NCBI RefSeq assembly: GCF_011386835.1
Contig: NC_088810.1
Span: 22,754,001-22,818,000, forward strand
Source of the DNA: Chrysemys picta bellii
Taxonomy: Eukaryota
Direction of reading: 5' to 3'
Length of the DNA: 64,000 bases
In this document: positions 24,020 to 60,900 of the stretch, piece by piece
How positions within the stretch are numbered: the first letter of the stretch is position 1
Layout of the letters: each line of letters opens with the position of its first letter
The notes under the pieces: generated by a model
The model's database searches: none
What the model was told of the DNA's origin: nothing
What the model saw: only the letters and a program-made list of their open reading frames with translations
Program-made: the position numbers and the translations under genes

Positions 24020-25451
24020 GTCCTCGTCTACACTACGAGTTTAGGTCAAATTTTGCAGCGTTAGATCGATTTAACTCTGCATCCCTCCACACGACAAAGC
24101 GATTTTTGTCGTCTTAAGGGGGTCTTAAAATGAATTTCTGTACTCCTCCCCTGACGAAGGGATTACCACTGAAATCAACATCACCGAGTTGAATTTGGGG
24201 TATTGTGGACATAATTTGACAGTATTGGCCTCCGGGAGCTATCCCGGAATGCTCCATTGTGACCATTCTGGACAGGACTCTCAACCCAGCTGCATTGGCC
24301 AAGTAGACCGGAAAAGTCTGGCGAACTTTTGAATTTTATTTCCTGTTTGGCCAGCATGGCAAGCTGATCAGCACAGGTGACCAAGCAGAGCTCATCAGCA
24401 GAGGTGACATGGAGTCCCAGAATCGCAAAAGAGCTCCAGCATGGACCGAACGGGAGGTACTGCCTCTGATCGGTGTATGGGGAGATGAATCCGTGCTATC
24501 AGAACTCCGCTCCAAAAGACGAAATGCCAAAATATTTGAAAAAATCTTCCCAGAGTCACTACCCTTGATAGCTGAATGTCAGTGATTGCATTGGCTACTT
24601 GAATCACAGCAGTCCCCACAGTCGATTTGCCCACTCCAAATTGATTACCAACTGACCGGCAGCAGTCTGGCATTGCAAGCTTCCACATGGATATGGCCAC
24701 TCACTTCTCAACAGTCAGGGTAGCTCTCATCTTGGTATTCCGGCACTTCAGGGTGGGGGAAAGTAACTCATAGAGTTCCAGGAAAGTGGCCTTACGCATG
24801 CGAAAATTTCACAGCCACTGGGAAACATCCCATACCTGCAACACTATGCGGTCCCACCGGTCTGTGCTTGTTTGCCGGGTCCGGAATCGGCGTTCCACTG
24901 TATCAACCAGCCCCACTGCCGCCGTGATGTCCCAATTGCCACAGCCCGTGCTTTCACGAACGTCTGTGTCCATGTCCACATCACAATCGTCCTCGTGCTG
25001 CCGTCTCTTGGCCAGGTTCTGCACATACCGCAGGATAATGCGTGAGGTGTTTACAATGCTTGCAAGAGCAACGGTGAGTTGGGCGGGCTCCATGCTTGCT
25101 GTGCTACTGTGTCTGCACCAGGCAAAAAGGCGCGAAATGATTGTCTGGAGTTGCTTTCACAGAGGGTGGGGAGAGTGACGACATGAACCCCAAACCACCC
25201 GCAACAATGTTTTTGCCCCATCAGGTATTGGAAGCTTAACCCATAATTCCAATGGGCAGCAGAGACAGCGGGAACTCTGGGATAGCTACCCACAGTGCAC
25301 CGCTCCGTGAGTCGATGCTAGCCACGGTAGTGAGGATGCACTCCATTGTCTTAATGCGCTTAGTGGGGACATACACAATCAACTGTATAAAATCGATTTA
25401 TAAAAATCGACTTCTATAAAATTGATCTAACTTCTTAGTGTAGACATACCC
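24020..25451. mobile_element. Old Harbinger, internally deleted (1.43 kb)
   Basis: TIRs GTCCTCGTCTACACTA / TAGTGTAGACATACCC, flanked by TAA / TTA. The Myb 5' end (MESQNRKRAPAWTEREV) is joined at ~24547 to a minus-strand transposase 5' remnant (MEPAQL..WDRIVLQVWD). Confidence 0.9.
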
Positions 25452-30201: not shown

Positions 30202-33200
30202 ACCCAGAAGAACGATCCGAGGAATGAGAAACAATCAGAAAAATGACAAGATAGAGATTCACCACTGATCTAATGGACAATGATGCCTACAACTCGACTT
30301 GCAGACTGTGGGTGTTCATCACCTCTATAAATCAGGCCTATCTGTGTCTTCCACTTGGTACATATTGTTGTAGCTTTATGATCTACAGGTTTTGCCGCTT
30401 AGTCTTATGCTTTCTGCTATTTGACGTTGAACTGGCTAAAACAAGTCACTTGGTTGAAAAAGGGACATGATTTTCAAACTCAACAGCTTCAAGGCAGAAA
30501 GCAGATGATCTTGTGTGAAAAGCCTCACTTCGGAGCGGGTGATTGGTTCTTGCTCGGATTGTAACCCTGAAAATACATTCTTTGTACTCTGCGTTAATTC
30601 ATTCTGCAAGTGTGTAGTCCACTGCTCATTCCCATTAAAAATTATTCTGCATCATAGCATTGGCCTTCTGGTTTTCCTTTCTCCTCCATTCTTTCTATCC
30701 CAAGCAGTTTGGGTGAAATTCACCACGGTGATGGTGCTCTGTACATGCTCCCTGCACTACATCCCTCCAACTCAAGAGAATCCCTAAGCAGCAAAGTACA
30801 TTAACTGGTCAATACCATGGTGCTGGCCATCTGCCCAGGGGAGATAAGTACTAACTGTGGTAAGAAGAAGATATTCCCCCTTGCTCCAAAAGTATCAGAA
30901 GGGAATTAGAATATATTTCCCTGCTCTAAATATTACATAAAATTGTAGAATCCTTGAACTCCAGGGCTGGAAGGAACCTTGGGAGGTCACCAAGTTCAGA
31001 CCTCTGGGAGGCGGCAGGACCTGACCTGACTGGTCTTTGTCTAAACTCTCCTTATAAACCTTCAGTGATGTAGATTCCACAACTTCCCGTGAAAGCCTGA
31101 AATCAACACTTTACGATCATTAGAGTTAGAAAGTCATTGCTAATATCTAACCTGTATTTCCCATCATGCAGATTAAGCCAATTACATCTCATCTTGTCTT
31201 CAGTGGACGCAGAACTATTGATCACCATGTTCTTTAAAACGGCCCTACACATATTTGAAAACTGTTACCCAGTCCCCCGTCAGTCTGCTTTTCTGAACAC
31301 TAAACATGCCCAGTGTTTTCAATTTGTCCTCAGAGGTCAGGGTTCTAAAACTTTTGTCATTTTACTAGCTCTCCTCTGGACTCTCTCCAGTTTGTCCACA
31401 TCTTCCCCACTGAAGTGTGCTGGGCAAAATTGGGTACAAAACTCCAGCTGAGGCCTTTATTGAATTTCATTTTGTTGATTTCAGATGAAGTCTCCAATTA
31501 GTGAAGCTCATTTTGAATTCTTAACCTGTCTTCCAAAGTGCTTGCAACCCCTCTCAGCTTGGTGTCCTCTGCAAATATTATCAGTGAACTGTCCACTCCA
31601 GTATTCAAGTTATTAGAGAAAATACTGAAGAGTAAAAGACCCAGGACAACCTCCTCTGGCTACCCCCCACCCCCTAGGTATAGCATCCTAGATTGACAGC
31701 AAACCATTGATAACCAATCTTTGAGTCCAGTCTTTCAACCAGTTATATAGCCACGTGATAATAATTTTGTCTGAACCATGTGGTTGAGGGAAATGTTTCC
31801 CAAGTTTGCTTATAAGAATGTCTGGTGTGACTGTGTCAAAAACTTTCCTAACATCAAGATATAGGTAGGACTTTAAAATAATTTCCCTCCAGTTAATTTA
31901 TGATAATATGAATATTTAAGTGAATATAAGGGAAAGGATTTTTAGTTGAATAATGAATTTTCTTCAGCTGACTCTGTGTCATTGCACTCCATATGTTTTA
32001 TGGAAATGTGCTTTTGAGTGTGAATATGATGTAACTGGAACATGCTTTGTGCAAAAGGTCTCTTGTAAGGTATCATATCAAACGTTATAACCTATAGGAA
32101 TATATTTCTTCTATTTGGATGCATGTATCATTCTTCTATCTGAAGCCAGAAATATGAAGTATAACTCTGAGGTCCTATTGTAATTATGCAAAGTGTGGGC
32201 CATTAATGGTGGTTTAGAATCTTGATGGCTCCCATTGACTAGGACAATTGGTTGTAAATGGTTTATTTACCTGCACACCTTCCTGTGTAGGTGTGGGCCA
32301 ACCCAGGAAGAATGGAGACTAGGGGTCTTACTGTGACATGTGACCATGTCACACGATACTGGAATCCATTTAATCCTTGTACTTTTCCATTGATGAGGCA
32401 GAGGTGGGGACAAGCACAGAGAGAAGATTCCCGCCTTGTGCCAAAGCTATAAAAAGGGGTGGAGCAGGACAATGGGGGCTACCAGTCATGAGAAAACCCC
32501 TGCCTGCCACCTGAGATGTCTGCTGGAACTAACAAGGACTGTACGGGGGGAAAGGATTGGGCCCAGATTAGGAAGGAGTCTAGTCTGTGAAAGGACCTTA
32601 CTGCAACATCTCTGAGGGTGAGATATTATCTGCAATCAGTTTCTTAATGTATTAGGCTTAACCTTGCGTGTTTTCACTTTATTTTGCTTGGTGACTTACT
32701 TTGGTCTGTCTGTTATTACTTGAAACCATTTAACTCCTACTTTTTACACTTAATAAAATCACTTTTGTTTATTAATAAACACAGAGTTAGGGTATGTCTA
32801 CACTACGAAATTAGTTCGAATTTATAGAAGCCCGTTTTATTGAAATCGGTTGTATACAGCCGATTGTGTGTGTCCACATAAAATGCTCTAGGTGCTCTAG
32901 TCGGCGGACCGCATCCACAGTACGAGGCTAGCGTCGACTTCCGGAGCATTGCACTATGGGTAGCTATCCCACAGCTAACCCACAGTTCCCTCAGTCTCCG
33001 CCGCCCCTTGGAATTCTGGGTTGAGATCCCAATGCCCGGATGATGCAAAACAGTGTCGCGGGCGGTTCTGGGTACATGTCGTCAGGCCCCTCCCCCCCCG
33101 TCACAGCAACGGCAGACAATAGATTCGCGCCTTTTTACCTGGGTTACCTGTGCAGACAACATACCACGGCAAGCATGGAGCCCGCTCAGCTCAGCTGAGC

Positions 33201-34231
33201 TCACCGTCACCATATGTCCTCTGGGTGCCGGCAGACGTGGGACTGCATTGCTACACAGCAGCAGCTGCTAACTGCCTTTTGGCGGTAGACGGTGTAGCGT
33301 GAGTGATAGCCGTGGGGCTGGCAGCCGTAGGGCTGCATTGCACCAGCCCCTTACCCTTTGGTAGGCGATGGTATATTATGACTGGTACCCATCGTCGTCG
33401 TACTGGAGTGGCTGTCAATCATGGCCACCTGGGCAGACATGCTACTGTTTCGATGATGATGGCTACCAGTCGTAGTATACTATTTTCTGCCAATTGCCCA
33501 GTATTGTCTGCTAAGCACCCAGAAGAGGCCGAGGGCGATGCTGGGTGCTGGCGGACGTGGGGCTGGCAGACGTGGGGCTGCATTGCTACACAGCAGCAGC
33601 CCCTTGCCTTTTGGCAGACGATGGTATATTATGATTGGTATCCATCATCATCGTACTGGAGAGGCTATCACTCATGCTGCACCGTCGGCTGCCAGCTTAA
33701 GATGTAAAAAATAGATTTGTTCTGTATTCATTTGCTTCCCCTTCCTCCGTGAAATCAATGGCCTGCTAAGCCCAGGGTTTTCAGTTTAATCTTTGGGGGG
33801 ACCATTCTGTGTGACAGTTGTTTGTGTTTCTCCCTGTTCCTGTACCTGTACGCCATGTCGTCACTCGGCCCTCCCTCCCGTCCTCCCTCCTTCTCCTGGT
33901 CCATCAGATACTAGTTTCGCGCCTTTTTTCTGACCAGGCGCCATAGCTAGCACTGGGATCATGGAGCCCGCTCAGATCACCGCGGCAATTATGAGCACTA
34001 TGAACACCACGCGCATTGTCCCGGTTCACTCTACTTCCCTGTAAACCAACCACCCCACCCCACCCTCCCCTCCCCAATTCGAGCACCGCTTGCAGAGGCA
34101 ATAAAGTCATTGTTTTTTCACATTCATGCATTCTTTATTAGTTCCTCACAGAAGTAGGGGGATAATTGCCAAGGTAGCCTGGGATGGGTGGGGGAGGAGG
34201 GATGGAAAAGGACACACTGCATTTTAAAACT

Positions 34232-36095
34232 TTAACTCTTATTGAAGGCCAGCCTTCTGATGCTTGGGCGATCATCTGGGGTGGAGTGACTGGGTGGCCG
34301 GAGGCCCCCCCACCGTGTTCTTGGGCGTCTGGGTGAGGAGGCTATGGAACTTGGGGAGGAGGGCTGTTGGTTACACAGGGGCTGTAGCGGCGGTCTCTGC
34401 TCCTGCTGCCTTTCCTGCAGCTCAACCATACGCTCGAGCATATCAGTTTGATGCTCCAGCAGACGGAGCATTGACTCTTGCCGTCTGTCTGCAAGCTGAC
34501 GCCACCTATCGTCTTCAGCCCGCCACTTGCTCTTTTCATCCCGCCATTCAGCCCGCCACCTCTCCTCTCGTTCATATTGTGCTTTTCTCATGTCCGACAT
34601 TGACTGCCTCCATGCATTCTGCTGTGCTCTATCAGCATGGGAGGACATCTGCAGCTCCGTGAACATATCGTCCCTCGTCCTACGTTTTCTCTTTCTAATG
34701 TTCACTAGCCTCTGCGAAGGAGAAACATTTGCAGCTGGTGGAGGAGAAGGGAGAGGTGGTTAAAAAAAGACACATTTTAGAGAACAATGGGTACACTCTT
34801 TCATTACAAGGTCGCATATTTCGGCTTGCAGGCAGCCATGGCAGGCCACAGTGTTTTGGCTTTTTTAACCTTCTTAACATGCGGGAAAGGTTTCAAACAG
34901 CAGCGCATTTCCCATATCAAGGATGAATTGGGTTGTCCATTTAAAATGGGTTTTCAATGTAAAAGGAGGGGCTGCGGTTTCCCGGTTAACATGCGGCACA
35001 AACAAGTAAACCACCCCCCCACACACACACACAGGATTCTCTGGGATGATCACTTCACCCCTCCCCTCCACCGCGTGGTTAACAGCGGGGAACGTTTCTG
35101 TTCAGAAGAGCAGGAACGGGCGCCCCTGAATGTCCCCTTAATAAAATCACCCCATTTCAACCAGGTGACCATGAATGATATCACTCTCCTGAGGATAACA
35201 AAGAGAGATAAGGAATGGATATTGTCTGCATGCCAGCAAACACCGGGACCATACGCTGCCATGCTTTGTTATGCAATGATTCCAGACTACGTGCTACTGG
35301 CCTGGCGTGGTAAAGTGTCCTACCATGGCGGACGGGATAAGGCAGCCCTCCCCAGAAACCTTTTGCAAACGCTTTGGGAGTACATAAAGGAGAGCTTTCT
35401 GGAGATGTCCCTGGAGGATTTCCGCTCCATCCCCATACACGTTAACAGACTTTTCCAGTAGATGTACTGGCCGCGATTGCCAGGGCAAATTAATCATTAA
35501 ACACGCTTGCTTTTAAACCACGTGTAATGTTTACAAATTTTTACAAAGGTACACTCACCAGAGGTCTCCTGTGTGCCCTGAGGGTCTTGGGTGAGTTCGG
35601 GGGTTACTGGTTCCAGGTCCAGGGTCACAAACATATCCTGGCTGTTGGGGAAACCGGTTTCTCCGCTTCCTTGCTGCTGTGAGCTACCTACAGTACCTCC
35701 ATCCTCATCTTCCTCGTTCCCCGAACCGTCTTCCCTGTGTGTTTCTCCAGTGAGAGAGTCATAGCACACGGTTGGGGTAGTGGTGGCTGCACCCCCTAGG
35801 ATCGCATGCAGCTCCGCGTAGTAGCGGCAAGTTTGCGGCTCTGCCCCGGACCTTCCGTTTGCTTCTCTGGCTTTGTGGTAAGCTTGCCGTAGCTCCTTAA
35901 TTTTCACGCGGCACTGCTGTGTGTCCCTGTTATGGCCTCGGTCCTTCATGGCCTTGGAGATCTTTTCTAATACTTTTCCATTTCTTTTACTGCTACGGAG
36001 TTCAGCTATCACTGCTTCATCTCCCCATATGCGAGCAGATCCCGTACCTCCCGTTCGGTCCATAATGGAGCTCTTTTGCGATCCTGGGACTCCAT
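34232..36095 (-). pseudogene. Harbinger Myb/SANT-like gene, two exons (36095-35559, 34734-34232), frameshifted
   Basis: Homologous to 46508..48060. A 1-bp deletion at 36030/1 (CTCGCATATGG vs CTCGCCATATGG) shifts the frame after ~22 codons. GT-AG sites are preserved. Confidence 0.85.
35165..35461 (+). CDS. Putative BEN-domain terminal exon nested antisense in the Myb intron (98 aa; 96 aa from ATG 35171)
   Basis: Open frame VTMNDITLL..TPGPYAAMLCYAMIPD..KVSYHGGRDKAALPRNLLQTLWEYIKESF..FRSIPIHVNRLFQ*. Acceptor CTTAAT..CCCATTTCAACCAG| at 35164 and ATTAAA at 35496. Motif spacing matches BEN domains by manual comparison only. Confidence 0.6.
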   Translation: MTMNDITLLRITKRDKEWILSACQQTPGPYAAMLCYAMIPDYVLLAWRGKVSYHGGRDKAALPRNLLQTLWEYIKESFLEMSLEDFRSIPIHVNRLFQ

Positions 36096-37586
36096 CACGG
36101 TTACCTGTGCTGATGAGCTCGGCGTGGTCACCTGTGCTCTCCACGCTGAGCAAACAGGAAATGAAATTCAAACGTTCGCGGGTCTTTTCCTGTCTACCTG
36201 GTCAGTGCATCTGAGTTGAGAGTGCTGTCCAGAGCGGTCACAATGAAGCACTGTGGGATAGCTCCCAGAGGCCAATAACGTCAAATTCCGTCCACACTAC
36301 CCCAATTCCGACCCGCAAAGGCCGGTTTTATCGCTAATCCCCTCGTCGGAGGAGGTGTAAAGAACCCGGTTTAAAGGACCCTTTAAGTCGAAAGAAAGGG
36401 CTTCGTCGTGTGGACGTGTCCAGGCTTAAATCGATTTAACGCTGCTAAAGTCGACCTAAACCCGTAGTGTAGACCAGGCCTAAGTGATTAATGCCTGGGA
36501 GAGCAAACAGCTGTGCATATCTCTCTATCAGTGATCTAGAGGGCGAACAATTCATGAGTTTACCCTGTATAAGCTTTATAGAGAATAAAACAGATGTATT
36601 TGGGGTTTGGATCCCATTGGGAGCTGGGTGACTGGGTGCTGGAGACAGGTAACTTGCTGAGCTGTTTTCAGTTAAATCTGCAGCTTTGGGAGCATGGACT
36701 AGACCCTGAGTCTGTGTTGCAGCAGGCTAGCATGTCTGGCTCAACAAGGCAGGGTTCTGGATTCCCAAGCTGGCAGGGAAAACTGGCTCAGAGATAATTT
36801 CAGCACATCAGGTGACAGTCCCAAGGGGATCTCTGTGACCGAACCTGTCACAGCACCTACTTACTATATTAGAAGCACTTGGCCAGTTTCATGCTGAAAA
36901 GTTCTAAGTCTCTGTTCCTGCAAAATGTATTCACAGAGAAACTGAAAATTAAGAATTTCAAAAGTTCGTGGTCCTAGATTGCGCTTGAGACATATTCATG
37001 GGAACAGTGGTCCAGAGAATAGACAGTGAATACTTCTAAAAGCCAGGATTTTTCAAGATGTCTGAAGTTGGGCACCAAAATCACCAGTTGCTTTTGAAAA
37101 TCTTGGCCTTGTGGTTAGCCATAGATGTCTTGATTGATCTTTGGTAAATCAATATTCTCTCTCCTCTACCCATATGTAAAAAAGGTGGTGGGGCTAAATC
37201 ATTTACTCTGGGAGGATTACAATCTATTTATCTAGTTGAGAATGTTGCATAGTCCCCAGTATCACAGCATGAAGAGTTTTCCAAGTTGAACTTGTCGGAA
37301 AGAGGTGATCCTGGGTATTATTGTACAATGGATATAGGATTCGAGGAATCACAGAGCAATTCCTTTGTTCCAGAATTCCCATGAAATGTTCTCTAGTAAA
37401 TTTCATATACCCTTTTGTTCTTCCTATTCCCCTCATAAGAGGAAGTGTAGGTCTCTATAGCAACTTAAAATCCACCCTGGTAATGGTGAGGTATTTTGTT
37501 GAAAGTGAAGGGCCTTCTATACAGTGGTAAAGTTTGTTGGACTCTGATTTCTTCTTTCTTGAACCATCCTCGACTCCCAGGACTAA

Positions 37587-38668
37587 GTCCTCGTCTACAC
37601 TACGAGTTTAGGTCAAATTTTGCAGCGTTAGATCGATTTAACTCTGCACCCCTCCACACGACAAAGCGATTTTTGTCGTCTTAAGGGGGTCTTAAAATGA
37701 ATTTCTGTACTCCTCCCCTGACGAAGGGATTACCCCTGAAATCGACATCACCGGGTTGAATTTGGGGTATTGTGGACATAATTTGACAGTATTGGCCTCC
37801 GGGAGCTATCCCAGAATGCTCCATTGTGACAATTCTGGACAGCACTCTCAACCCAGCTGCATTGGCCAGGTAGACCGGAAAAGTCCGGCGAACTTTTGAA
37901 TTTTATTTCCTGTTTGGCCAGGGTGGCAAGCTGATCAGCACAGGTGACCATGCAGAGCTCATCAGCAGAGGTGACATGGAGTCCCAGAATCGCAAAAGAG
38001 CTCCAGCATGGACCGAACGGGAGGTACTGCCCCTGATCGGTGTATGGGGAGATGAATCCGTGCTATCAGAACTCCGCTCCAAAAGACGAAATGCCAAAAT
38101 ATTTGAAAAAATCTTCCCAGAGTCACTACCCTTGATAGCAGAATGTCAGTGATTGCATTGGCTACTTGAATCACGAACGTCTGTGTCCATGTCCTCATCA
38201 CAATCGTCCTCGTGCTGCCGTCTCTTGGCCAGATTCTGCACATACTGCAGGATAATGCGTGAGGTGTTTACAATGCTTGCAAGAGCAGCGGTGAGCTGGG
38301 CGGGCTCCATGCTTGCTGTGCTATGGCGTCTGCACCAGGCAAAAAGGCGTGAAATGATTGTCTGGAGTTGCTTTCACAGAGGGTGGGGAGAGTGACGACA
38401 TGAACCCAAAACCACCCGCAACAATGTTTTTGCCCCATCAGGTATTGGAAGCTTAACCCATAATTCCAATGGGCAGCAGAGACAGCGGGAACTCTGGGAT
38501 AGCTACCCACAGTGCACCGCTCCGTGAGTCGATGCTAGCCACGGTAGTGAGGATGCACTCCATTGTCTTAATGCGCTTAGTGGGGACATACACAATCAAC
38601 TGTATAAAATCGATTTATAAAAATCAACTTCTATAAAATCGACCTAACTTCTTAGTGTAGATATACCC
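37587..38668. mobile_element. Old Harbinger, doubly deleted (1.08 kb)
   Basis: Same ends and same Myb/transposase junction as 24020-25451, plus a further ~350-bp deletion at ~38174 (TCAC microhomology). Confidence 0.9.
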
Positions 38669-46122: not shown

Positions 46123-46507
46123 GGCCTGGTCTACACTACGGGTTTAGGTCGACTTTAGCAGCGTTAAACCGAATTAAGCCTGGACACGTCCACACAACGA
46201 GGCCCTTTCTTTCGACTTAAAGGGCCCTTTAAACCGGTTTCTTTACACCACCTCCGACGAGGGGATTAGCGATAAAACCGGCCTTTGCGGGTCGGAATTG
46301 GGGTAGTGTGGACGGAATTCGATGTTATTAGCCTCCGGGAGCTATCCCACAGTGCTTCATTGTGACCGCTCTGGACAGCGCTCTCAACTCAGATGCACTG
46401 ACCAGGTAGACAGGAAAAGACCCGCGAAGGTTTGAATTTCATTTCCTGTTTGCCCAGCGTGGAGAGCACAGGTGACCACGCAGAGCTCATCAGCACAGGT
46501 AACCGTC

Positions 46508-48060
46508 ATGGAGTCCTCCCAGGATCGCAAAAGAGCTCCAGCATGGACCGAACGGGAGGTACGAGATCTGCTCGCCATATGGGGAGATGAAGCAGTGATA
46601 GCTGAACTCCGTAGCAGTAAAAGAAATGGAAAAGTATTAGAAAAGATCTCCAAGGCCATGAAGGACCGAGGCCATAACAGGGACACACAGCAGTGCCGCG
46701 TGAAAATTAAGGAGCTACGGCAAGCCTACCACAAAGCCAGAGAAGCAAACGGAAGGTCTGGAGCAGAGCCGCAAACTTGCCGCTACTACGCGGAGCTGCA
46801 TGCGATCCTAGGGGGTGCAGCCACCACTACCCCAACCGTGTGCTATGACTCTCTCACTGGAGAAACACACAGGGAAGACGGTTCGGGGAACGAGGAAGAT
46901 GACGATGGAGGTACTGTAGGTAGCTCACAGCAGCAAGGAAGCGGAGAAACCGGTTTCCCCAACAGCCAGGATATGTTTGTGACCCTGGACCTGGAACCAG
47001 TAACCCCCGAACTCACCCAAGACCCTCAGGGCACACAGGAGACCTCTGGTGAGTGTAACTTTGTAAATATTTGTAAACATTACAAAAAAAAAGCAAGCAA
47101 GTCTGTTAACGTGTATGGGGATGGAGCGGAAATCCTCCAGGGACATCTCCAGAAAGCTCTCCTGGTTGAAATGGGGTGATTTTATTAAGGGGGACATTTA
47201 GAGGCGCCCGTTCCTGCTATTCTGACCAGAAATGTTCCCCGCTGTTAACCACGCGGTGGGGGGGAGGGGTGAAGTGATCATCCCAGAGAATCGTGTGTGT
47301 GTGTGGGGGGGCTTTACTTGTGTTTGTGCCGCATGTTAACCGGGAAACCGCAGCCCCCTCCTTTTACATTGAAACCCCATTTTAAATGGACAACCCAATT
47401 CATCCTTGATATGGGAAATGCGCTGCTGTTTGCAACCTTTCCCGCATGCTAAGAAGGTTAAAATAGCCAAAACACTGTGGCCTACGATGGCTGCCTGCAA
47501 GCCGAAATATGCGACCTTGTAATGAAAGAGTGTACCCATTGTTCCCAAAAATGTGTCTTTTTTAACCACCTCTCCCTTCTCCTCCACCAGCTGCAAATGT
47601 TTCTCCTTCGCAGAGGCTCGTGAACATTAGAAAGAGAAAACGTAAGACGAGGGACGAGATGTTCACGGAGCTGCAGATGTCCTCCCACGCTGATAGAGCA
47701 CAGCAGAATGCGTGGAGGCAGTCAATGTCGGAGATGAGAAAAGCCCAACATGAACGAGAGGAGAGGTGGCGGGCTGAAGACGATAGGTGGCGTCAGCTTG
47801 CAGACAGACGGCAAGAGGCAATGCTCCGTCTGCTGGAGCATCAAAGTGATATGCTCGAGCGTATGGTTGAGTTGCAGGAAAGGCAGCAGGAGCAGAGACC
47901 GCCGCTACAGCCCCTGTGTAACCAACAGCCCTCCTCCCCAAGTTCCATAGCCTCCTCACCCAGACGCCCAAGAACACGGTGGGGGGGCCTCCGTCCACCC
48001 AGTCACTCCACCCCAGATGATCGCCCAAGCATCAGAAGGCTGGCCTTCAATAAGAGTTAA
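46508..48060 (+). CDS. Harbinger Myb/SANT-like DNA-binding protein, join(46508..47048,47591..48060), 336 aa
   Basis: WTEREVRDLLAIW..RDTQQCRVKIKELRQAY trihelix motif (Myb_DNA-bind_4 type). The phase-1 GT-AG intron (TCTG|GTGAGT..CCACCAG|CT) splices in frame to a basic NLS-like segment and coiled coil. AATAAA at 48152. Confidence 0.88.
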
Positions 48061-48311
48061 AGTTTTAAAATGCAGTATGTCCTTTTCCATCCCTCCTCCC
48101 CCACCCATCCCAGCTACCTTGGCAATTATCCCCCTACCTCTGTAAGGAACTAATAAAGAATGCATGAATGTGAAAAAACAATGACTTTATTGCCTCTGCA
48201 AGCGGGAGGGGAGGGGAGGGTGGGGTGGGGTGGTTGGTTTACAGGGAAGTAGAGTGAACCGGGTCGGGGGGGGGGGTTGGAGGGTTCATCAAGGAGAAAC
48301 AAACAGAAGTT

Positions 48312-49613
48312 TCACACAGTAGCCTGGCCAGTCACAAAACTCGTTTTCAAAGCTTCTCTGATGCGCACCGCACCCTGCTGTGCTCCTCTAACCGCCCTGG
48401 TGTCTGGCTGCGCGTAATCAGCGGCCAGGCGAGTTGCCTCAACCTCCCACCCCGCCATAAAGGTCTCCCCCTTACTCTCACAGATATTGTGGAGCGCACA
48501 GCAAGCAGCAATAACAATGGGGATATTCTTTTCGCTGAGGTCTGAGCGAGTCAGTAAACTGCGCCAGCGCGCTTTTAAACGTCCAAATGCACATTCCACC
48601 ATCATTCGGCACTTGCTCAGCCTGTAGTTGAACAGGTCCTGACTCCTGTCCAGGCTGCCTGTGTACGGCTTCATGAGCCATGGCATTAAGGGGTAGGCTG
48701 GGTCCCCAAGGATCACGATAGGCATTTCAACATCCCCAATGGTCACTTTCTGGTCCGGGAAGAAAGTCCCTTCCTCCAGCTTTCGAAACAGAGCAGAGTT
48801 CCTGAAGACGCGAGCATCATGTACCTTTCCCGGCCATCCCACGTTGATGTTGGTGAAACGTCCCTTGTGATCCACCAGGGCTTGCAGCAGCATTGAAAAG
48901 TACCCCTTGCGGTTTACGTAGTCGGTGGCTTGGTGCTCCGGTGACAAGATAGGGATATGGGTTCCGTCTATGGCCCCGCCACAGTTTGGGAATCCCATTT
49001 CAGCAAAACCATCCACTATTGACTGCACGTTGCCCAGAGTCACTACCCTTGCTATCACCAGGTCTTTCATTGCCCTGGCAAATTGGATCACAGCAGCCCC
49101 CACCGTAGATTTGCCCACTCCAAATTGATTCCCGACTGACCGGTAGCTGTCTGGCGTTGCAAGCTTCCACAGGGCTATCGCCACACGCTTCTCAACTGTG
49201 AGGGCTGCTCTCATCTTGGTATTCTGGCGTTTCAGGGCAGGGGAAAGCAAGTCACAAAGTTCCATGAAAGTGCCCTTACGCATGCGAAAGTTTCGCAGCC
49301 ACTGGGAATCGTCCCATACCTACAGCACGATGCGGTCCCACCAGTCTGTGCTTGTTTCCCGGGCCCAGAATCGGCGTTCCACGGTATCAACCTGCCCCAG
49401 TAACACCATGATTTCCACATTGCTGGGGCCTGTGCCTTGTGAGAGGTCTATGGCCATGTCAATTTCCTCATCACTCTCGTCGCCGCGCTGCAATCGCCTC
49501 CTCGCCTGGTCCGGGTTTCGCCTTGGCATGTTCTGGCTCTGCATATACTCCAGGACAATGCGCGTGGTGTTCATAGTGCTCATAATTGCCGCGGTGATCT
49601 GAGCGGGCTCCAT
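48312..49613 (-). pseudogene. Harbinger DDE transposase (HARBI1-like, 433 codons) with one nonsense codon
   Basis: ORFs 49320..49613 and 48312..49283 are in frame, separated only by TAG at 49320-49322 (CAG in the older copies). Catalytic motifs GAIDGTH, LGDPAYPL and VECAFGRLK are intact. AATAAA on the minus strand at 48186-48191. Confidence 0.93.
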
Positions 49614-57924: not shown

Positions 57925-60900
57925 GGTCTACACTACGAGTTTAGGTTGAATTTAGCAGCGTTAGATCGATTTAACTCTGCACCCCTCCACACAACAAAGC
58001 CATTTTTGTCTACTTAATGGGGTCTTAAAATCGATTTCTGTCCTCCTCCCCCGATGAGGGGATTAGCACTGAAATCTACATCGACGGGTTGAATTTGGGT
58101 TATTGTGGACATAATTTGACAGTATTGGCCTCCGGGAGCTATCCCAGAGTGCTCCATTGTGACCGCTCTGGACAGCACTCTCAACTCAGATGCATTGGGC
58201 AGGTAGACAGGAAATCCCCGGCAAACATTTGAATTTTATTTCTGTTTGGCCAGCGTGGCAAGCTGATCAGCACAGGTGACCATGCGGAGATCATCAGCAG
58301 AGGTGACCATGGAGTCCCAGAATCACAAAGGAGCTCCAGCATGGACCGAACGGGAGGTACTGGATCTGATCGCTGTATGGGGAAATGAATCCATGCTATC
58401 AGATCTCCGTTCCAAAAGACGAAATGCCAAAATATTTGAAAAAATCTCCAAGGGCATGAAGGACAGAGGCTATAACCGGGACCTCCAGCAGTGCCGCATG
58501 AAACTTAAGGAGCTCAGGCAAGCCTACCAAAAAAACAAAAAGACATGCCGCTTCTATCATGAGCTGCATGCAATTCTAGGGGGTGCCCCTACAACGACCC
58601 CACCCCTGGACATGGACTCCTGCAAGGGCATCTGACGCAACAGGGATGAGGATTTTGGGGAGAAGGAAGATGCGGAGGAAGAGGAGGTTGAAGTTAGTAC
58701 ACAGCAGGTAAGTGGAGAAACCGTTCTCCCCGACAGCCAGGAACTGTTTATCACCCTGGAGACATTACCCTCCCAACCCGGGCTCACGGATATTGAAGGC
58801 AGAGAAGGCCCCTCTGGTGACTGTACCTTTGTAAATATAATACATAGTTTAAAAGCAAGAGTGTTTAATGATTATTTGCCCTGAAGACTTGGGATGTATT
58901 TGCCGCCAGTAAAGATACTGGAATGCAGTCAAGCAACATCCGTTCTTTATCTCTCTCAGGAGAGTGATATCATTCATGGTCACCAGATTGAAATAGAGGA
59001 ATTTTATTAAGGGGACATTTAGGGGTGGCCATTCCTGCTGGGCTCTGTGCCTGTGGCTGAGAAGAAATCATCCCCGCTGTTAGCCACATGGTGCGGGGAG
59101 TTGTGAAGCAATCATCCCAGAGAATTGGGTGTGAGGGGCGGTTTAGTTGGGTTTGTGCTGCACGTTAACCCAAAAACCGCAGCCCCTCCTTTCAAATGGC
59201 CAACCTATTTTAAATGGTCAACCCAACTCTCCCTTTTTTCCTCCTGCAGCTGCAAATGTTTCAACGCTACCACTATCATCTCCGTCCCAGAGGCTCGCAC
59301 TGATAAGAAGGCGAAAAAAAACGCACTCGCGATGAAATGTTCTCTGAGCTCATGCAGTCCTCCCGCACTGAAAGAGCTCAGCAAAATGCGTGGAGGCAGA
59401 CAATGTCAGAGTACAGGAAAGCACAAAATGAACGCAAGGACAGGTGGCGGGAGCAGGAGGAGAGGTTGCATCAGTGTGATGAGAGGAGGCAGGAAGTAAT
59501 GCTGAGGCTAATGGAGGATCAAACTGATATGCTCCAGCGTATGGTTGAGGTGCAGGAAAGGCAGCAGGAGCACAGACCGCCGCTGCAGCACCTGTGTAAC
59601 CAACCGCCCTCCTCCCCAAGTTCCATAGCCTCCTCACCCAGACGCCCAAGAACACAGGGTGGGAGGGGGCCTCCGGACTCCAACCACTCCACGGTGATCG
59701 AAGGGGGTAGGGGAGGGCGGTTGGCTTACAGGGAAGTAGAGTGAACCAAGGGGGCGGGTTTTCAACAAAGAGAAACAAACAGAACTTTCACACTGTAGCC
59801 TGGCCAGTCATGAAATTGGTTTTCAAAGCTTCTCTGATGTGCAGCACGCCCTGCTGTGCTCTTCTAACTGCCCTGATGTCGGGCTGCGCGTAATCAGTGG
59901 TGAAGCAATTTGCCTCTACCACCCACCCCGCCATAAACGTCTCCCTCTTACTCTCACAAATATTGTGGAGCACACAGCAAGCCATAATATGTACTGGTTG
60001 GCAAGGTGGTCCAGTGCCAAGATAGGAATATGAGTTCCGTCTATCACCCCACCACAGTTAGGGAATCCCATTGCAGCAAAGCCATCCACTATGACCTGCA
60101 CATTTCCCAGAGTCACTACCCTTGATAGCAGAATGTCAGTGATTGCATTGGCTACTTGAATCACAGCAGTCCCCACAGTTGATTTGCCCACTCCAAATTG
60201 ATTCCCGACTGACCGGTAGCAGTCTGGCATTGCAAGCTTCCACGTGGATATGGCCACTCACTTCTCAACAGTCAGGGTAGCTCTCATCTTGGTATTCCGG
60301 CACTTCAGGGTGGGGGAAAGCAACTCATAGAGTTCCAGGAAAGTGGCCTTACGCATGCGAAAGTTTCACAGCCACTGGGAAACATCCCATACCTGCAACA
60401 CTATGCGGTCCCACCAGTCTGTGCTTGTTTGCCAGGACCTGAATCGGCGTTCCGCTGTATCAATCAGCCCCACTGCCGCCATGATGTCCCAATTGCCACA
60501 GCCCGTGCTTTCAGGAACATCTGTGTCCAGGTCCTCATCACAATCGTCCTCGTGCTGCCGTCTCTTGGTCAGGTTCTGCACATACTGCAGTATAATGCGT
60601 GAGGTGTTTACAATGCTTGCAACAGCAGCGGTGAGCTGGGCTCCCTACTTGCCATGCTATGGCATCTGCACGGGTAACCCAGACAAAAAGGCGACTAATG
60701 ATTGTCTGGAGTTGCTTTCATGAAGGGAGGGAGGGAGGGAGTGGAGAGTGACGACATGTACCCAATACCACCTGCGATAATGTTTTTGCCCCATCAGGCA
60801 TTGGAAGCTTAACCCATAATTTCAATGGGCAGCAGAGACAGCGGGAACTGTGGGATAGCTTCCCACAGTGCACCGCTCCGTGAGTCGATGCTAGTCACAG

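What the first reader, a model, noticed from the sequence alone, without database searches (positions are those of the whole stretch)
35165..35501. A third, BEN-like gene hidden antisense inside the Myb intron of a turtle Harbinger
Seen in sequence: the 824-bp Myb intron of the 32790-36480 element contains, on the opposite (transposase) strand, a complete terminal-exon cassette. It has a branch-like CTTAAT and AG acceptor at 35164, a 98-codon open frame, TAG at 35461 and ATTAAA 35 nt later. By-eye comparison with recalled BEN sequences: PGPYAAMLCYAMIPD resembles the BEN 'P.xFAxxLxxxLFP' helix, SYHGGRDKAALPRNLLQTLWEYIKESF keeps the 'G...K..L....I..I..YV...F/Y' spacing, and F..I...VN.L resembles the terminal BEN helix. 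Established knowledge: canonical Harbingers encode only a DDE transposase and a Myb/SANT partner, and BEN domains are DNA-binding/chromatin-repression modules. Inference: this family is a three-gene transposon with an extra DNA-binding or regulatory factor. I cannot tell from here whether this has already been described.
Basis: partly seen in the sequence, partly recalled or inferred. Interest (0 to 1): 0.9.

Follow-up and report, generated by a model that had tools for sequence, protein, structure and literature searches.

The report
Third BEN-fold gene in turtle Harbingers
The open frame hidden antisense in the Myb-gene intron of this turtle Harbinger transposon is a real coding exon, kept under purifying selection, for a small BEN-fold (DNA-binding type) protein, so these supposedly two-gene transposons carry a third conserved coding unit.

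Summary

- **The cassette:** Window 35165-35461 (+) is a 98-codon terminal exon. It has an AG acceptor, a TAG stop and an ATTAAA signal 35 nt later. It lies antisense in the 823-nt Myb intron, and RNA contigs of four runs show that intron spliced out.
- **Conservation:** The same layout (transposase, Myb exon 2, BEN exon, Myb exon 1) recurs in three divergent Harbinger families of this genome and in Chelonia mydas. Between two families only this exon aligns within the intron.
- **Selection:** dN/dS is 0.215, at or below the values for the transposase (0.36) and Myb (0.27 and 0.37). Differences by codon position are 29/15/49.
- **Fold:** Pfam BEN does not reach threshold. The AlphaFold model (pLDDT 95) matches solved BEN domains first (Z 12.0 to BEND3 BEN4) and nothing else above Z 2.8.
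- **Expression:** A short upstream exon ending in ATG followed by a GT donor is conserved in all three families. One RNA contig joins it to the exon, and no genomic copy carries that junction.
- **Other gene models:** Some models instead join the transposase N-terminus, or host exons, to the same acceptor.
- **Not shown:** DNA binding and any regulatory role are inferred.
- **This copy:** It is a defective, internally deleted copy.

The parts
32790..36480 (+). Internally deleted (non-autonomous) copy of a ~5.0-kb Harbinger, family 'W'. It has terminal inverted repeats (GGGTATGTCTACACTAC... / ...GTAGTGTAGACCAGGCC) and 3-bp flanks TTA and TAA.
   Evidence: The full-length reference copy is L031:2128-7120.
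33962..34020 (+). Remnant of the transposase gene: the start codon and about 20 codons. A 1.29-kb deletion removes the DDE domain. In L031 the intact ORF is 433 aa.
   Evidence: Pfam DDE_Tnp_4 matches the L031 ORF at E 2.2e-37.
34232..34735 (-). Myb-like gene, exon 2: coiled-coil C-terminal part, with the stop at 34232-34234.
   Evidence: The exon boundary comes from the RNA joint.
34736..35558 (-). Myb-like gene intron, 823 nt. It hosts the BEN unit on the opposite strand.
   Evidence: The joint L031 5371>6198 (CT..AC) is present in 4 of 4 runs.
35559..36131 (-). Myb-like gene, exon 1 (Myb_DNA-bind_4 domain). It is frameshifted near 36030 in this copy.
   Evidence: Pfam E 5.9e-14 and E 4.2e-19 on L031. 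The frameshift is seen.
34787..34840 (+). Candidate BEN exon 1 (5' end unknown). It ends in ATG at 34838-34840, and an in-frame ATG at 34787 is present in 25 of 25 copies. The motif CAGGCAG[C/A]CATG|GTA[G/A]GCC is conserved between families W and C.
   Evidence: The RNA joint L031 5476>5804 is, and no genomic copy carries that junction.
34841..35164 (+). Small intron of the BEN unit, 324 nt here. The donor reads GC in this copy and GT in 22 of 25 copies. The stretch contains a poly-C/(CA)n tract of variable length, and the acceptor AG is at 35163-35164.
35165..35461 (+). BEN-fold coding exon: 98 codons plus a TAG stop.
35496..35501 (+). ATTAAA poly(A) signal, 35 nt after the stop and about 58 nt before the end of Myb exon 1. 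It is identical in 25 of 25 copies.
   Evidence: Families C and A have AATAAA after their stops.

Best explanation
The frame at 35165-35461 is the coding exon of a third conserved protein of this clade of vertebrate Harbinger transposons. The protein is a roughly 99-116 aa BEN-only protein, encoded on the transposase strand inside the intron of the convergently oriented Myb-like gene.

**Shown**
- The exon is conserved in position, phase and coding capacity across families whose surrounding intron no longer aligns.
- It is under purifying selection.
- It is predicted with high confidence to adopt the BEN fold.
- Its acceptor is used in RNA and in gene models.

**Most likely expression (partly shown)**
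- It is a two-exon unit lying wholly inside the Myb intron.
- Exon 1 is short and ends exactly in ATG, followed by a GT donor. That ATG sits in a good Kozak context.
- Exon 1 splices in phase 0 to the BEN exon, which carries its own stop and poly(A) signal.
- The mature mRNA is therefore complementary only to Myb pre-mRNA, not to spliced Myb mRNA.

**Function (inferred from what BEN-only proteins do)**
- It is probably a sequence-specific DNA-binding factor that regulates the element, for example by repressing or insulating its promoters or by marking its ends or targets. It would act in trans alongside the transposase and its Myb partner.

**Side effect**
- The strong acceptor plus poly(A) cassette traps host transcripts when a copy sits in sense orientation inside a host intron.
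For: **Architecture**
- The order transposase(+), Myb exon 2(-), BEN exon(+), Myb exon 1(-) holds in family W (L031), family C (L067, L069), family A (L068) and C. mydas (L042).

**Constraint between W and C**
- BEN is 58% identical at the protein level, with dN 0.275, dS 1.28 and a ratio of 0.215. The alignment is gap-free over 98 codons, and differences by codon position are 29/15/49.
- For comparison, the transposase ratio is 0.36, Myb exon 1 is 0.27 and Myb exon 2 is 0.37.
- Within the intron only the exon and a 30-nt patch align.

**Fold**

**Splice signals**
- All three families have a phase-0 acceptor and a poly(A) signal.
- ATG|GTAGGC (W), ATG|GTAAGC (C) and ATG|GTGAGA or ATG|GTGAGT (A) lie 130-330 nt upstream of the acceptor.
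- An RNA contig joins L031 5476 to 5804 with GT..AG ends.
- That junction has 0 genomic copies at up to 3 mismatches. The same tool finds 564 and 2031 copies of two control junctions.
- The C. mydas model P0021 is M plus the exon, 101 aa.
- The exon has no conserved internal start codon.
Against: - Pfam BEN (PF10523) is never reached. There is no hit on the W, C or A exons. Only 2 of 29 family members give sub-threshold hits, best E 0.0065. No Harbinger copy is found when the genome is scanned with the BEN model.
- A profile search of PDB sequences finds no BEN chain.
- The exon 1 to exon 2 splice rests on a single contig in one run (depth 38, 22 nt on the shorter side). The runs are only guessed to be RNA, although the Myb splice in all four supports that.
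- A fourth family seen on one short contig (L071) shows no ATG|GT within 489 nt upstream.
- No promoter, transcription start or poly(A) site was observed.
- Copies that have lost most of the exon still multiplied to 564 copies, as expected for a trans-acting factor. So the exon is not needed in cis.
- The function is entirely inferred.
Confidence: 0.7

Rival explanations
1. The exon is not a separate gene. It is an alternative terminal exon of the transposase gene. A donor inside the transposase ORF (CAG|GT after ...WWDRIVLQ, phase 0) splices over the DDE domain and Myb exon 2 to the BEN exon. The product is a catalytically dead fusion of the transposase N-terminus with BEN, which would act as a regulator in the manner of the alternatively spliced P-element repressor.
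For: - Several gene models join the two parts. Malaclemys RefSeq isoforms P0006 and P0046 read ...WWDRIVLQ|VSTNDITLL. C. mydas P0017 (family A) and P0002 also join them. Pangshura P0052 joins 194 aa of transposase including DUF8040 (...TLGN|VTLND).
- The donor after VLQ and the acceptor are both phase 0 in families W, C and A.
- The same donor is used in many other turtle gene models: P0057, P0059, P0061 and P0065.
Against: - No joint from L031 3595 to 5804 appears among the joints listed for the four runs (three further joints were not shown).
- The junction position in the transposase differs between models: after about 40, 98 or 193 aa. That looks like opportunistic splicing into a strong acceptor, as in the host-gene chimeras.
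- Q-V (CAG GTN) lies in a conserved transposase motif, so the donor may be incidental.
- The transposase has its own stop and AATAAA, which would have to be read through.
- This model does not explain the conserved ATG|GT exon.
- The two modes are not mutually exclusive.
Confidence: 0.2
2. The exon has no function of its own for the element. The conservation reflects a non-coding constraint, such as a splicing or regulatory element of the Myb intron or an antisense-frame artefact. Alternatively it is only an exonisation-prone cassette or a decaying captured host fragment.
For: - Within the young W family, substitutions are not codon-biased: 6 synonymous, 15 non-synonymous and 1 stop.
- Many annotated proteins that contain the exon are evident chimeras with host genes.
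- There is no Pfam hit.
Against: - Neutral decay within a 98%-identical family is expected after insertion and says nothing about the source copies.
- Between families the signal is specific to this frame: 0.215, against 1.2-2.5 in four of the other five frames and 0.36 in the third-position-matched antisense frame. There is a third-position excess and no indel over 98 codons.
- Protein similarity persists down to 23-40% identity in turtles, geckos and zebrafish, with conservative substitutions.
- The predicted fold is compact and very confident.
Confidence: 0.05
3. The main selected role of the cassette is as a built-in gene trap. Acceptor, BEN domain and poly(A) signal together truncate host transcripts and tag host N-termini with a DNA-binding domain. 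The free BEN protein would be secondary.
For: - Host N-terminus plus BEN-exon models occur in several species. Examples are Rab3-like P0004, CDK-like P0005, TEDC1 P0007, GlyT1-like P0010 (Mauremys), PFKFB4 isoforms P0025 and others (Trachemys, Chrysemys), and KDM4B-like P0047 (Gekko).
- Contigs with foreign sequence ending exactly at the acceptor are seen as loose ends before L031 5802.
Against: - Trapping explains conservation of the acceptor and poly(A) signal. It does not explain purifying selection on the whole BEN fold in the element's own lineage, nor the conserved ATG-bearing upstream exon.
- Most trapped products are probably neutral or harmful to the host.
Confidence: 0.05

Closest known systems
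BEN-solo DNA-binding factors (Drosophila Insensitive and Elba1/2; mammalian BEND5 and BEND6) and the BEND3 BEN4 domain
   Same: - It is a single BEN-type domain with five helices and a middle loop.
- The best structural matches are BEND3 BEN4 (Z 12.0), BEND3 BEN3 (10.5), BANP (9.0), BEND6 (7.5) and Insv (7.1).
- The G..(R/N)K.aLP.N motif aligns with the G..KK.LDP motif of canonical BEN domains.
   Different: - Identity to solved BEN domains is only 8-17%.
- It scores below the Pfam BEN threshold.
- The protein is almost nothing but the domain (~99 aa).
- It is encoded by a transposon, not a host gene.
- DNA binding, dimerisation and repression were not tested.
Canonical PIF/Harbinger elements (for example zebrafish Harbinger3_DR, and the domesticated pair HARBI1/NAIF1)
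   Same: - It has a DDE_Tnp_4 transposase and a Myb/SANT-like partner.
- It has terminal inverted repeats and 3-bp flanking duplications.
- Copy numbers are in the thousands.
   Different: - A third conserved coding unit is nested antisense in the intron of the Myb-like gene.
- The library searches for Harbinger together with BEN, or with a third ORF, found no description of this. Repbase could not be consulted.
Transposon-encoded regulators made by alternative splicing or truncation (P-element 66-kDa and KP repressors)
   Same: A small, non-catalytic protein of DNA-binding type is encoded by the element itself. Under the rival model it would share the transposase N-terminus.
   Different: - Here the DNA-binding module is an unrelated BEN fold on its own exon, not a truncated transposase.
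- A repressor role is a hypothesis.
BEN-like domains recognised only by structure (DUF4806 and LIN-14; Pan et al. 2023, as cited in PMC11075544 and PMC10789644)
   Same: It is a divergent BEN fold that Pfam BEN misses and that is found by structure search followed by a reverse search against solved BEN domains, the procedure described in PMC10789644.
   Different: - It belongs to a different sequence family.
- No link to Harbinger transposons is mentioned in the texts I could read. The primary paper (PMC10348805) is not held in the library.

Membership tests
BEN domain (Pfam PF10523) | Match to the Pfam BEN profile above the gathering score (23.2 bits) | tested here: not met
   - There is no hit on the W, C or A exons.
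- Two of 29 family members hit below threshold, best E 0.0065.
- The full-length distant relative P0031 scores 20.8 bits and zebrafish P0041 scores 12.8 bits.
- A genome scan with PF10523 finds host BEN genes but no Harbinger copy.
[quoted passage not shown] | Five helices with a loop between helices 3 and 4, predicted with high confidence | tested here: met
   The AF2 model has pLDDT 95.1 and pTM 0.85. Helices are at 13-22, 27-38, 41-47, 64-77 and 83-95, with a loop and short strand at 48-63.
BEN domain (structural definition) | A reverse structure search returns solved BEN domains first, well separated from unrelated folds | tested here: met
   - Foldseek PDB ranks 1-12 are all BEN domains, though with weak E-values of 0.12 or higher.
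- VIA-align gives Z 12.0, 11.9 and 10.5 to BEND3, and 9.0 to BANP. Fifteen BEN entries score Z 5.2 or more, and the next unrelated chain scores 2.8.
- AFDB clusters list named BEN proteins from rank 6 onward.
BEN domain | Profile-to-profile sequence similarity to canonical BEN domains | tested here: inconclusive
   hhalign of A1 against five BEN domains of the same genome (A2) gives E 9.6e-5 and probability 58% over 75 columns, in a sensible register. The profile search against PDB sequences finds no BEN chain.
BEN domain | Sequence-specific DNA binding | not testable with these tools
   This needs EMSA, DAP-seq or a protein-binding microarray with the expressed protein.
PIF/Harbinger superfamily | DDE_Tnp_4 transposase | tested here: met
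   The L031 433-aa ORF matches PF13359 at E 2.2e-37. It is deleted in the window copy.
PIF/Harbinger superfamily | Second gene encoding a Myb/SANT-like DNA-binding protein | tested here: met
   PF13837 matches at E 5.9e-14 in the window and E 4.2e-19 in L031. Its intron is spliced in RNA contigs.
PIF/Harbinger superfamily | Terminal inverted repeats and a 3-bp target-site duplication | tested here: met
   The TIRs were read. The flanks are TTG/TTG in L032. In the window they are TTA/TAA, one mismatch.
Independent gene (own transcription unit) | Own start codon exon, intron, stop and poly(A) signal; own promoter and transcription start | tested here: inconclusive
   - The ATG|GT exon is conserved in three families.
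- One RNA contig shows the splice, and the junction is absent from the genome.
- The promoter, transcription start and poly(A) site were not observed.
- Competing gene models start in the transposase or in host exons.

The most novel reading that the evidence does not exclude
This clade of vertebrate Harbingers, found in turtles and probably in squamates and fishes, is a three-component transposon system.
- A BEN-only protein is encoded by a two-exon gene nested antisense in the Myb intron. It binds specific sites in the element or in the host genome and controls transposase and Myb expression or target choice.
- Its transcription is mechanically coupled to Myb pre-mRNA synthesis by the nested antisense layout.
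- Every sense-oriented intronic insertion also acts as a natural gene trap. It fuses host N-termini to a DNA-binding domain, giving the host a standing source of new BEN-tagged proteins.
Probability: 0.3. Interest if true: 0.85.

Novelty: new variant of a known kind. Interest (0 to 1): 0.72.

Why it matters
- **A third player.** PIF/Harbinger elements are taught and annotated as two-gene transposons. A third protein that is as constrained as the other two and has the fold of sequence-specific repressors and insulators suggests an unrecognised layer of self-regulation or targeting. It could be tested directly in existing Harbinger transposition assays.
- **Scale.** The families concerned are very large and very young in this genome. 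There are 2031 copies with the intact exon junction in family W alone, and more than 10,000 first-look candidates each for families C and A. A trans-acting DNA-binding product could therefore matter for the host as well.
- **Annotation.** The cassette explains a class of odd turtle and gecko gene models in which host proteins end in the same ~98-aa tail. These are chimeras with a transposon exon.
- **BEN evolution.** The finding adds a transposon-borne lineage to the BEN fold. That bears on how host BEN genes may have arisen.

Tried and rejected
**Sequence searches that found no BEN link**
- Pfam on the 98-aa and 224-aa translations gave no BEN hit.
- phmmer and a profile search against PDB sequences gave only chance hits, such as ribosomal protein S11 and a serpin.

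**The long ORF**
- The 224-codon ORF (34787-35461) is not one coding unit. Its upstream 126 codons are broken in 20 of 25 copies and have no homologues.

**Within-family selection test**
- Codon statistics within the 98%-identical W family are uninformative (S:N 6:15). The apparently lower divergence of the exon may be a sampling bias, because the copies were chosen with that region as the query.

**A false splice**
- The RNA 'joint' 5801>6027 with GT..AG ends looked like a splice. It is a DNA deletion carried by 564 genomic copies, including the window's own second copy at about 47100-47175.

**Micro-exon idea**
- I considered a 9-13-nt ATG micro-exon, because AG lies 9-13 nt upstream of the ATG in all three families. 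The spliced contig runs at least 22 nt into contiguous upstream sequence, so this reading is not favoured.

**Searches that returned little**
- The phage collection search was irrelevant.
- The look-up of encoding contigs had no record for P0006.
- The Logan contigs L070 and L071 are unspliced and show only the acceptor.
- The second and third word-index protein searches returned almost nothing.
- Literature searches found no prior description. Pan et al. 2023 could not be read.

**Not run**
- Complex prediction was not used, because no protein-protein binding claim is made.
Full report
**1. What is at the coordinates**

A pyrimidine-rich stretch with CTTAAT (35137-35142) leads to an AG at 35163-35164. 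An open frame of 98 codons runs 35165-35458, followed by TAG at 35459-35461 and ATTAAA at 35496-35501.

The frame lies on the plus strand between two minus-strand ORFs. The upstream-acting one carries a Myb_DNA-bind_4 domain (Pfam E 5.9e-14). The host element spans 32790-36480 and has terminal inverted repeats and 3-bp flanks.

**2. The element and its family**

- The Myb-intron region has more than 2,700 first-look candidates in the window's genome, and the best are 98-99% identical.
- Most copies diverge from the window copy at about 34020. There they carry a further 1.29 kb that encodes a DDE transposase ending in its own stop.
- The full-length copy L031:2128-7120 has an intact 433-aa transposase (PF13359, E 2.2e-37) and both Myb exons (PF13837, E 4.2e-19). 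It also keeps the antisense frame.
- The window copy is therefore a defective, internally deleted member. Its Myb exon 1 is also frameshifted.
- The genome is probably Chrysemys picta bellii. Its contig C3 has the same length, 209,633,115, as the contig recorded for C. picta proteins. This is an inference.

**3. The Myb intron is real**

I laid contigs of four runs (labelled 'RNA?') on L031. All four contain a joint 5371>6198 with CT..AC ends. That is a GT..AG intron of 826 nt on the minus strand, and it maps to window 34736-35558 (823 nt). The result also indicates that the runs are RNA.

**4. Is the frame more than chance?**

- In 25 aligned copies the 98-codon frame is intact in 24. The 126 codons upstream of the acceptor, which make the ORF look 224 codons long in this copy, are intact in only 5, largely because of a poly-C/(CA)n tract.
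- Within this very young family the substitutions are not codon-biased. That is expected for neutral decay after insertion and is uninformative.
- The decisive evidence comes from divergent relatives. A phmmer search of 1.84 billion representative proteins with the whole 224-aa ORF returned 45 hits (24 below 1e-10). Nearly all begin at or just after query residue ~125, the acceptor, and run toward residue ~224. None extends meaningfully upstream.
- The family alignment A1 (29 sequences, down to 23% identity) shows conservative substitutions and a conserved core: PGPYAA.LC.AM.P ... G.RNKAALPRNL..RI..YL.ESF.

**5. The nested architecture is conserved**

The same genome holds two further large families with the exon: C (14,392 first-look candidates) and A (12,707).

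- In full-length copies of C (L067, L069) and A (L068), and in a Chelonia mydas scaffold (L042), the order is always transposase (+), Myb exon 2 (-), BEN exon (+), Myb exon 1 (-).
- Identities to family W are as follows (tblastn values; the codon-alignment values differ slightly):

| Family | Transposase | Myb exon 1 | Myb exon 2 | BEN exon |
|---|---|---|---|---|
| C | 73% | 48% | 42% | 59% |
| A | 62% | 54% | 27% | 42% |

- At the DNA level, only the exon (276 nt at 70%) and one 30-nt patch of the intron align between W and C. Between W and the C. mydas copy of family A (L042), nothing in the intron aligns at the DNA level.

**6. Selection**

- For W against C the exon aligns without a gap over 98 codons. 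dN is 0.275, dS is 1.28 and the ratio is 0.215. Differences by codon position are 29/15/49.
- Four of the other five frames give ratios of 1.2-2.5. The one antisense frame whose third positions coincide gives 0.36.
- The same pair gives 0.36 for the transposase, 0.27 for Myb exon 1 and 0.37 for Myb exon 2.
- The exon is thus at least as constrained as the two canonical genes. dS is near saturation, so the ratios are rough.

**7. Is it BEN?**

By sequence, not formally.
- Pfam BEN gives nothing on the W, C or A exons.
- Scanning the genome with PF10523 finds host BEN genes but none of the thousands of Harbinger copies.
- Only two of 29 family members give sub-threshold hits. The full-length distant relatives P0031 and zebrafish P0041 score 20.8 and 12.8 bits against a 23.2-bit cut-off.
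- A profile search of PDB sequences finds no BEN chain.

By profile-to-profile comparison, weakly.
- A1 against five BEN domains of the same genome gives E 9.6e-5 and probability 58% over 75 columns.

By structure, clearly.
- AlphaFold2 on A1 gives pLDDT 95.1 and pTM 0.85, with five helices and a middle loop. That matches the structural definition of BEN quoted in PMC10789644.
- Foldseek against the PDB ranks twelve BEN chains first, though its E-values are weak (0.12 or higher).
- VIA-align gives Z 12.0 (2.1 A over 87 residues) to BEND3 BEN4, 10.5 to BEND3 BEN3 and 9.0 to BANP. Fifteen BEN entries score 5.2 or more, and the next unrelated chain scores 2.8.
- In AFDB clusters, family members come first, including independent models of C. 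mydas proteins. They are followed by a long run of entries named BEN domain-containing protein.

I therefore call it a divergent BEN-fold domain. It fails the Pfam membership test and passes the structural one.

**8. How is the exon expressed?**

The exon has no conserved internal start codon. The window's ATG at codon 3 is a minority variant (3 of 25), and family A has none. It must therefore be spliced to something upstream. Three kinds of upstream partner are seen.

(a) A short exon inside the same intron.
- The only conserved intron patch between W and C is CAGGCAG[C/A]CATG followed by GTA[G/A]GCC. That is an ATG in good Kozak context followed immediately by a splice donor.
- Family A has CCAAAATG|GTGAGA, and the C. 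mydas copy has ATG|GTGAGT, about 130 nt upstream of its acceptor.
- Splicing ATG to the phase-0 exon gives M plus 98-100 aa. The C. mydas model P0021 is exactly that.
- One contig in run X4 joins L031 5476 to 5804 with GT..AG ends.
- The joined sequence has no genomic copy at up to 3 mismatches. The same search finds 564 and 2031 copies of two control junctions. The joint is therefore not a deletion variant.
- In family W an in-frame ATG 17 codons further upstream (window 34787, 25 of 25 copies) could extend the product to 116 aa.

(b) The transposase N-terminus.
- Malaclemys RefSeq isoforms P0006 and P0046 join ...WWDRIVLQ to the exon.
- Also joining them are C. mydas P0017 and P0002. Pangshura P0052 does so too, but at different positions in the transposase.
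- The CAG|GT after VLQ is phase 0 in all three families.
- No such joint appeared among the joints listed for the four runs.

(c) Host exons.
- Models with N-termini of Rab3-like, CDK-like, TEDC1, GlyT1-like, PFKFB4 and KDM4B-like proteins all end in this exon.
- Contigs with foreign sequence ending exactly at the acceptor were seen.

I read (a) as the native mode. I read (b) and (c) as consequences of a strong acceptor and poly(A) cassette. However, (b) may be a genuine second isoform.

**9. Mechanism**

Shown:
- a conserved, selected coding exon with a BEN fold;
- a nested antisense position;
- an acceptor that is used;
- a poly(A) signal that ends the unit about 58 nt before Myb exon 1, so the mature transcript overlaps only Myb intron sequence.

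Inferred from established knowledge of BEN-only proteins (sequence-specific DNA binders acting as repressors or insulators; Dai et al. 2013 and Aoki et al. 2012, as cited in PMC11601247):
- The product binds specific DNA and regulates the element's own expression or targeting in trans.
- A subfamily of 564 copies lacks residues 1-74 of the exon and includes a window copy with an intact transposase ORF. This shows the exon is not needed in cis.

**10. Novelty**

- Full-text searches for Harbinger with BEN, for BEN with transposons, for Harbinger in turtles and for a third ORF found no description.
- Repbase and Pan et al. 2023 could not be read, so prior mention cannot be excluded.
- I rate it a new variant of a known kind: a PIF/Harbinger clade with a third, BEN-fold gene.

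**11. Earlier notes of this scan**

- One proposes the transposase-to-BEN splice, which is my rival 1.
- One proposes conservation of the exon in the diverged copy at 58.8-59.0 kb. I find only the first ~25 codons there, with a frameshift.
- One concerns the sibling copy at 46-51 kb. I find an intact transposase but a deleted BEN exon.

Noticed in passing
window 46472-49613 (minus-strand copy; BEN remnant at 47099-47175): A sibling copy of the same family has an intact 433-codon transposase frame (95% aa identity to L031). Its BEN exon lacks residues 1-74: the acceptor ...TTCAACCAG is joined directly to GAGAGCTTTCTGG. The same deletion junction occurs in 564 genomic copies, so a BEN-less subfamily has multiplied. 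In RNA contigs it mimics a GT..AG splice.
   Followed up: yes
window 58276-60641 (minus-strand copy): A diverged Harbinger copy (Myb exon 1 55%, Myb exon 2 65%, transposase 62-74% aa identity to family W) has the same layout. Only the first ~25 codons of the nested exon are recognisable (...VTMNDITLLR, then a frameshift, then ERDKERMLLDC). The rest is missing.
   Followed up: partly
window 24409-25093 and 37976-38310: Two further Harbinger fragments place a Myb exon 1 piece (aa 13-58, 69.6% identity in both) next to a transposase 5' piece on the opposite strand. They look like short derivatives, or a duplicated fragment of another family, flanking the studied element.
   Followed up: no
window 33200-33660: The 5' non-coding part of the element contains an internal direct duplication of about 330 bp. 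The string GGCAGACGTGGGGCTGCATTGCTACACAGCAGCAG and the sequence around it occur twice. It is also present in L031, as shown by the shared 134-aa spurious ORF. It may hold subterminal binding repeats.
   Followed up: no
L031:3302-3595 compared with L069 (transposase N-terminal ~100 aa): Between families W and C the first ~100 codons of the transposase evolve almost neutrally (dN/dS 0.9, 43% identity). The rest is constrained (0.24, 77% identity). The conserved ...RFWA.ETST.WWDRIVLQ motif sits at the end of this region, right at the internal CAG|GT donor used in many gene models.
   Followed up: partly
proteins P0004, P0005, P0007, P0010, P0025, P0047 (other turtles and geckos): Annotated isoforms of host genes end in this transposon exon. 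The genes are Rab3-like, CDK-like, TEDC1, GlyT1-like, PFKFB4 (in Trachemys and Chrysemys) and KDM4B-like (in Gekko). These are probably gene-trap or exonisation events, or annotation artefacts, and are worth flagging in reptile gene sets.
   Followed up: partly
protein P0041/P0049 (Danio rerio LOC541387, 445 aa) and P0031 (source organism unknown): Distant relatives of the exon (23-33% identity) sit at the C-terminus of a zebrafish protein with an N-terminal coiled coil. They occur twice in a protein of unknown source. Both give sub-threshold Pfam BEN hits. They could be domesticated or transposon-borne relatives outside reptiles.
   Followed up: no
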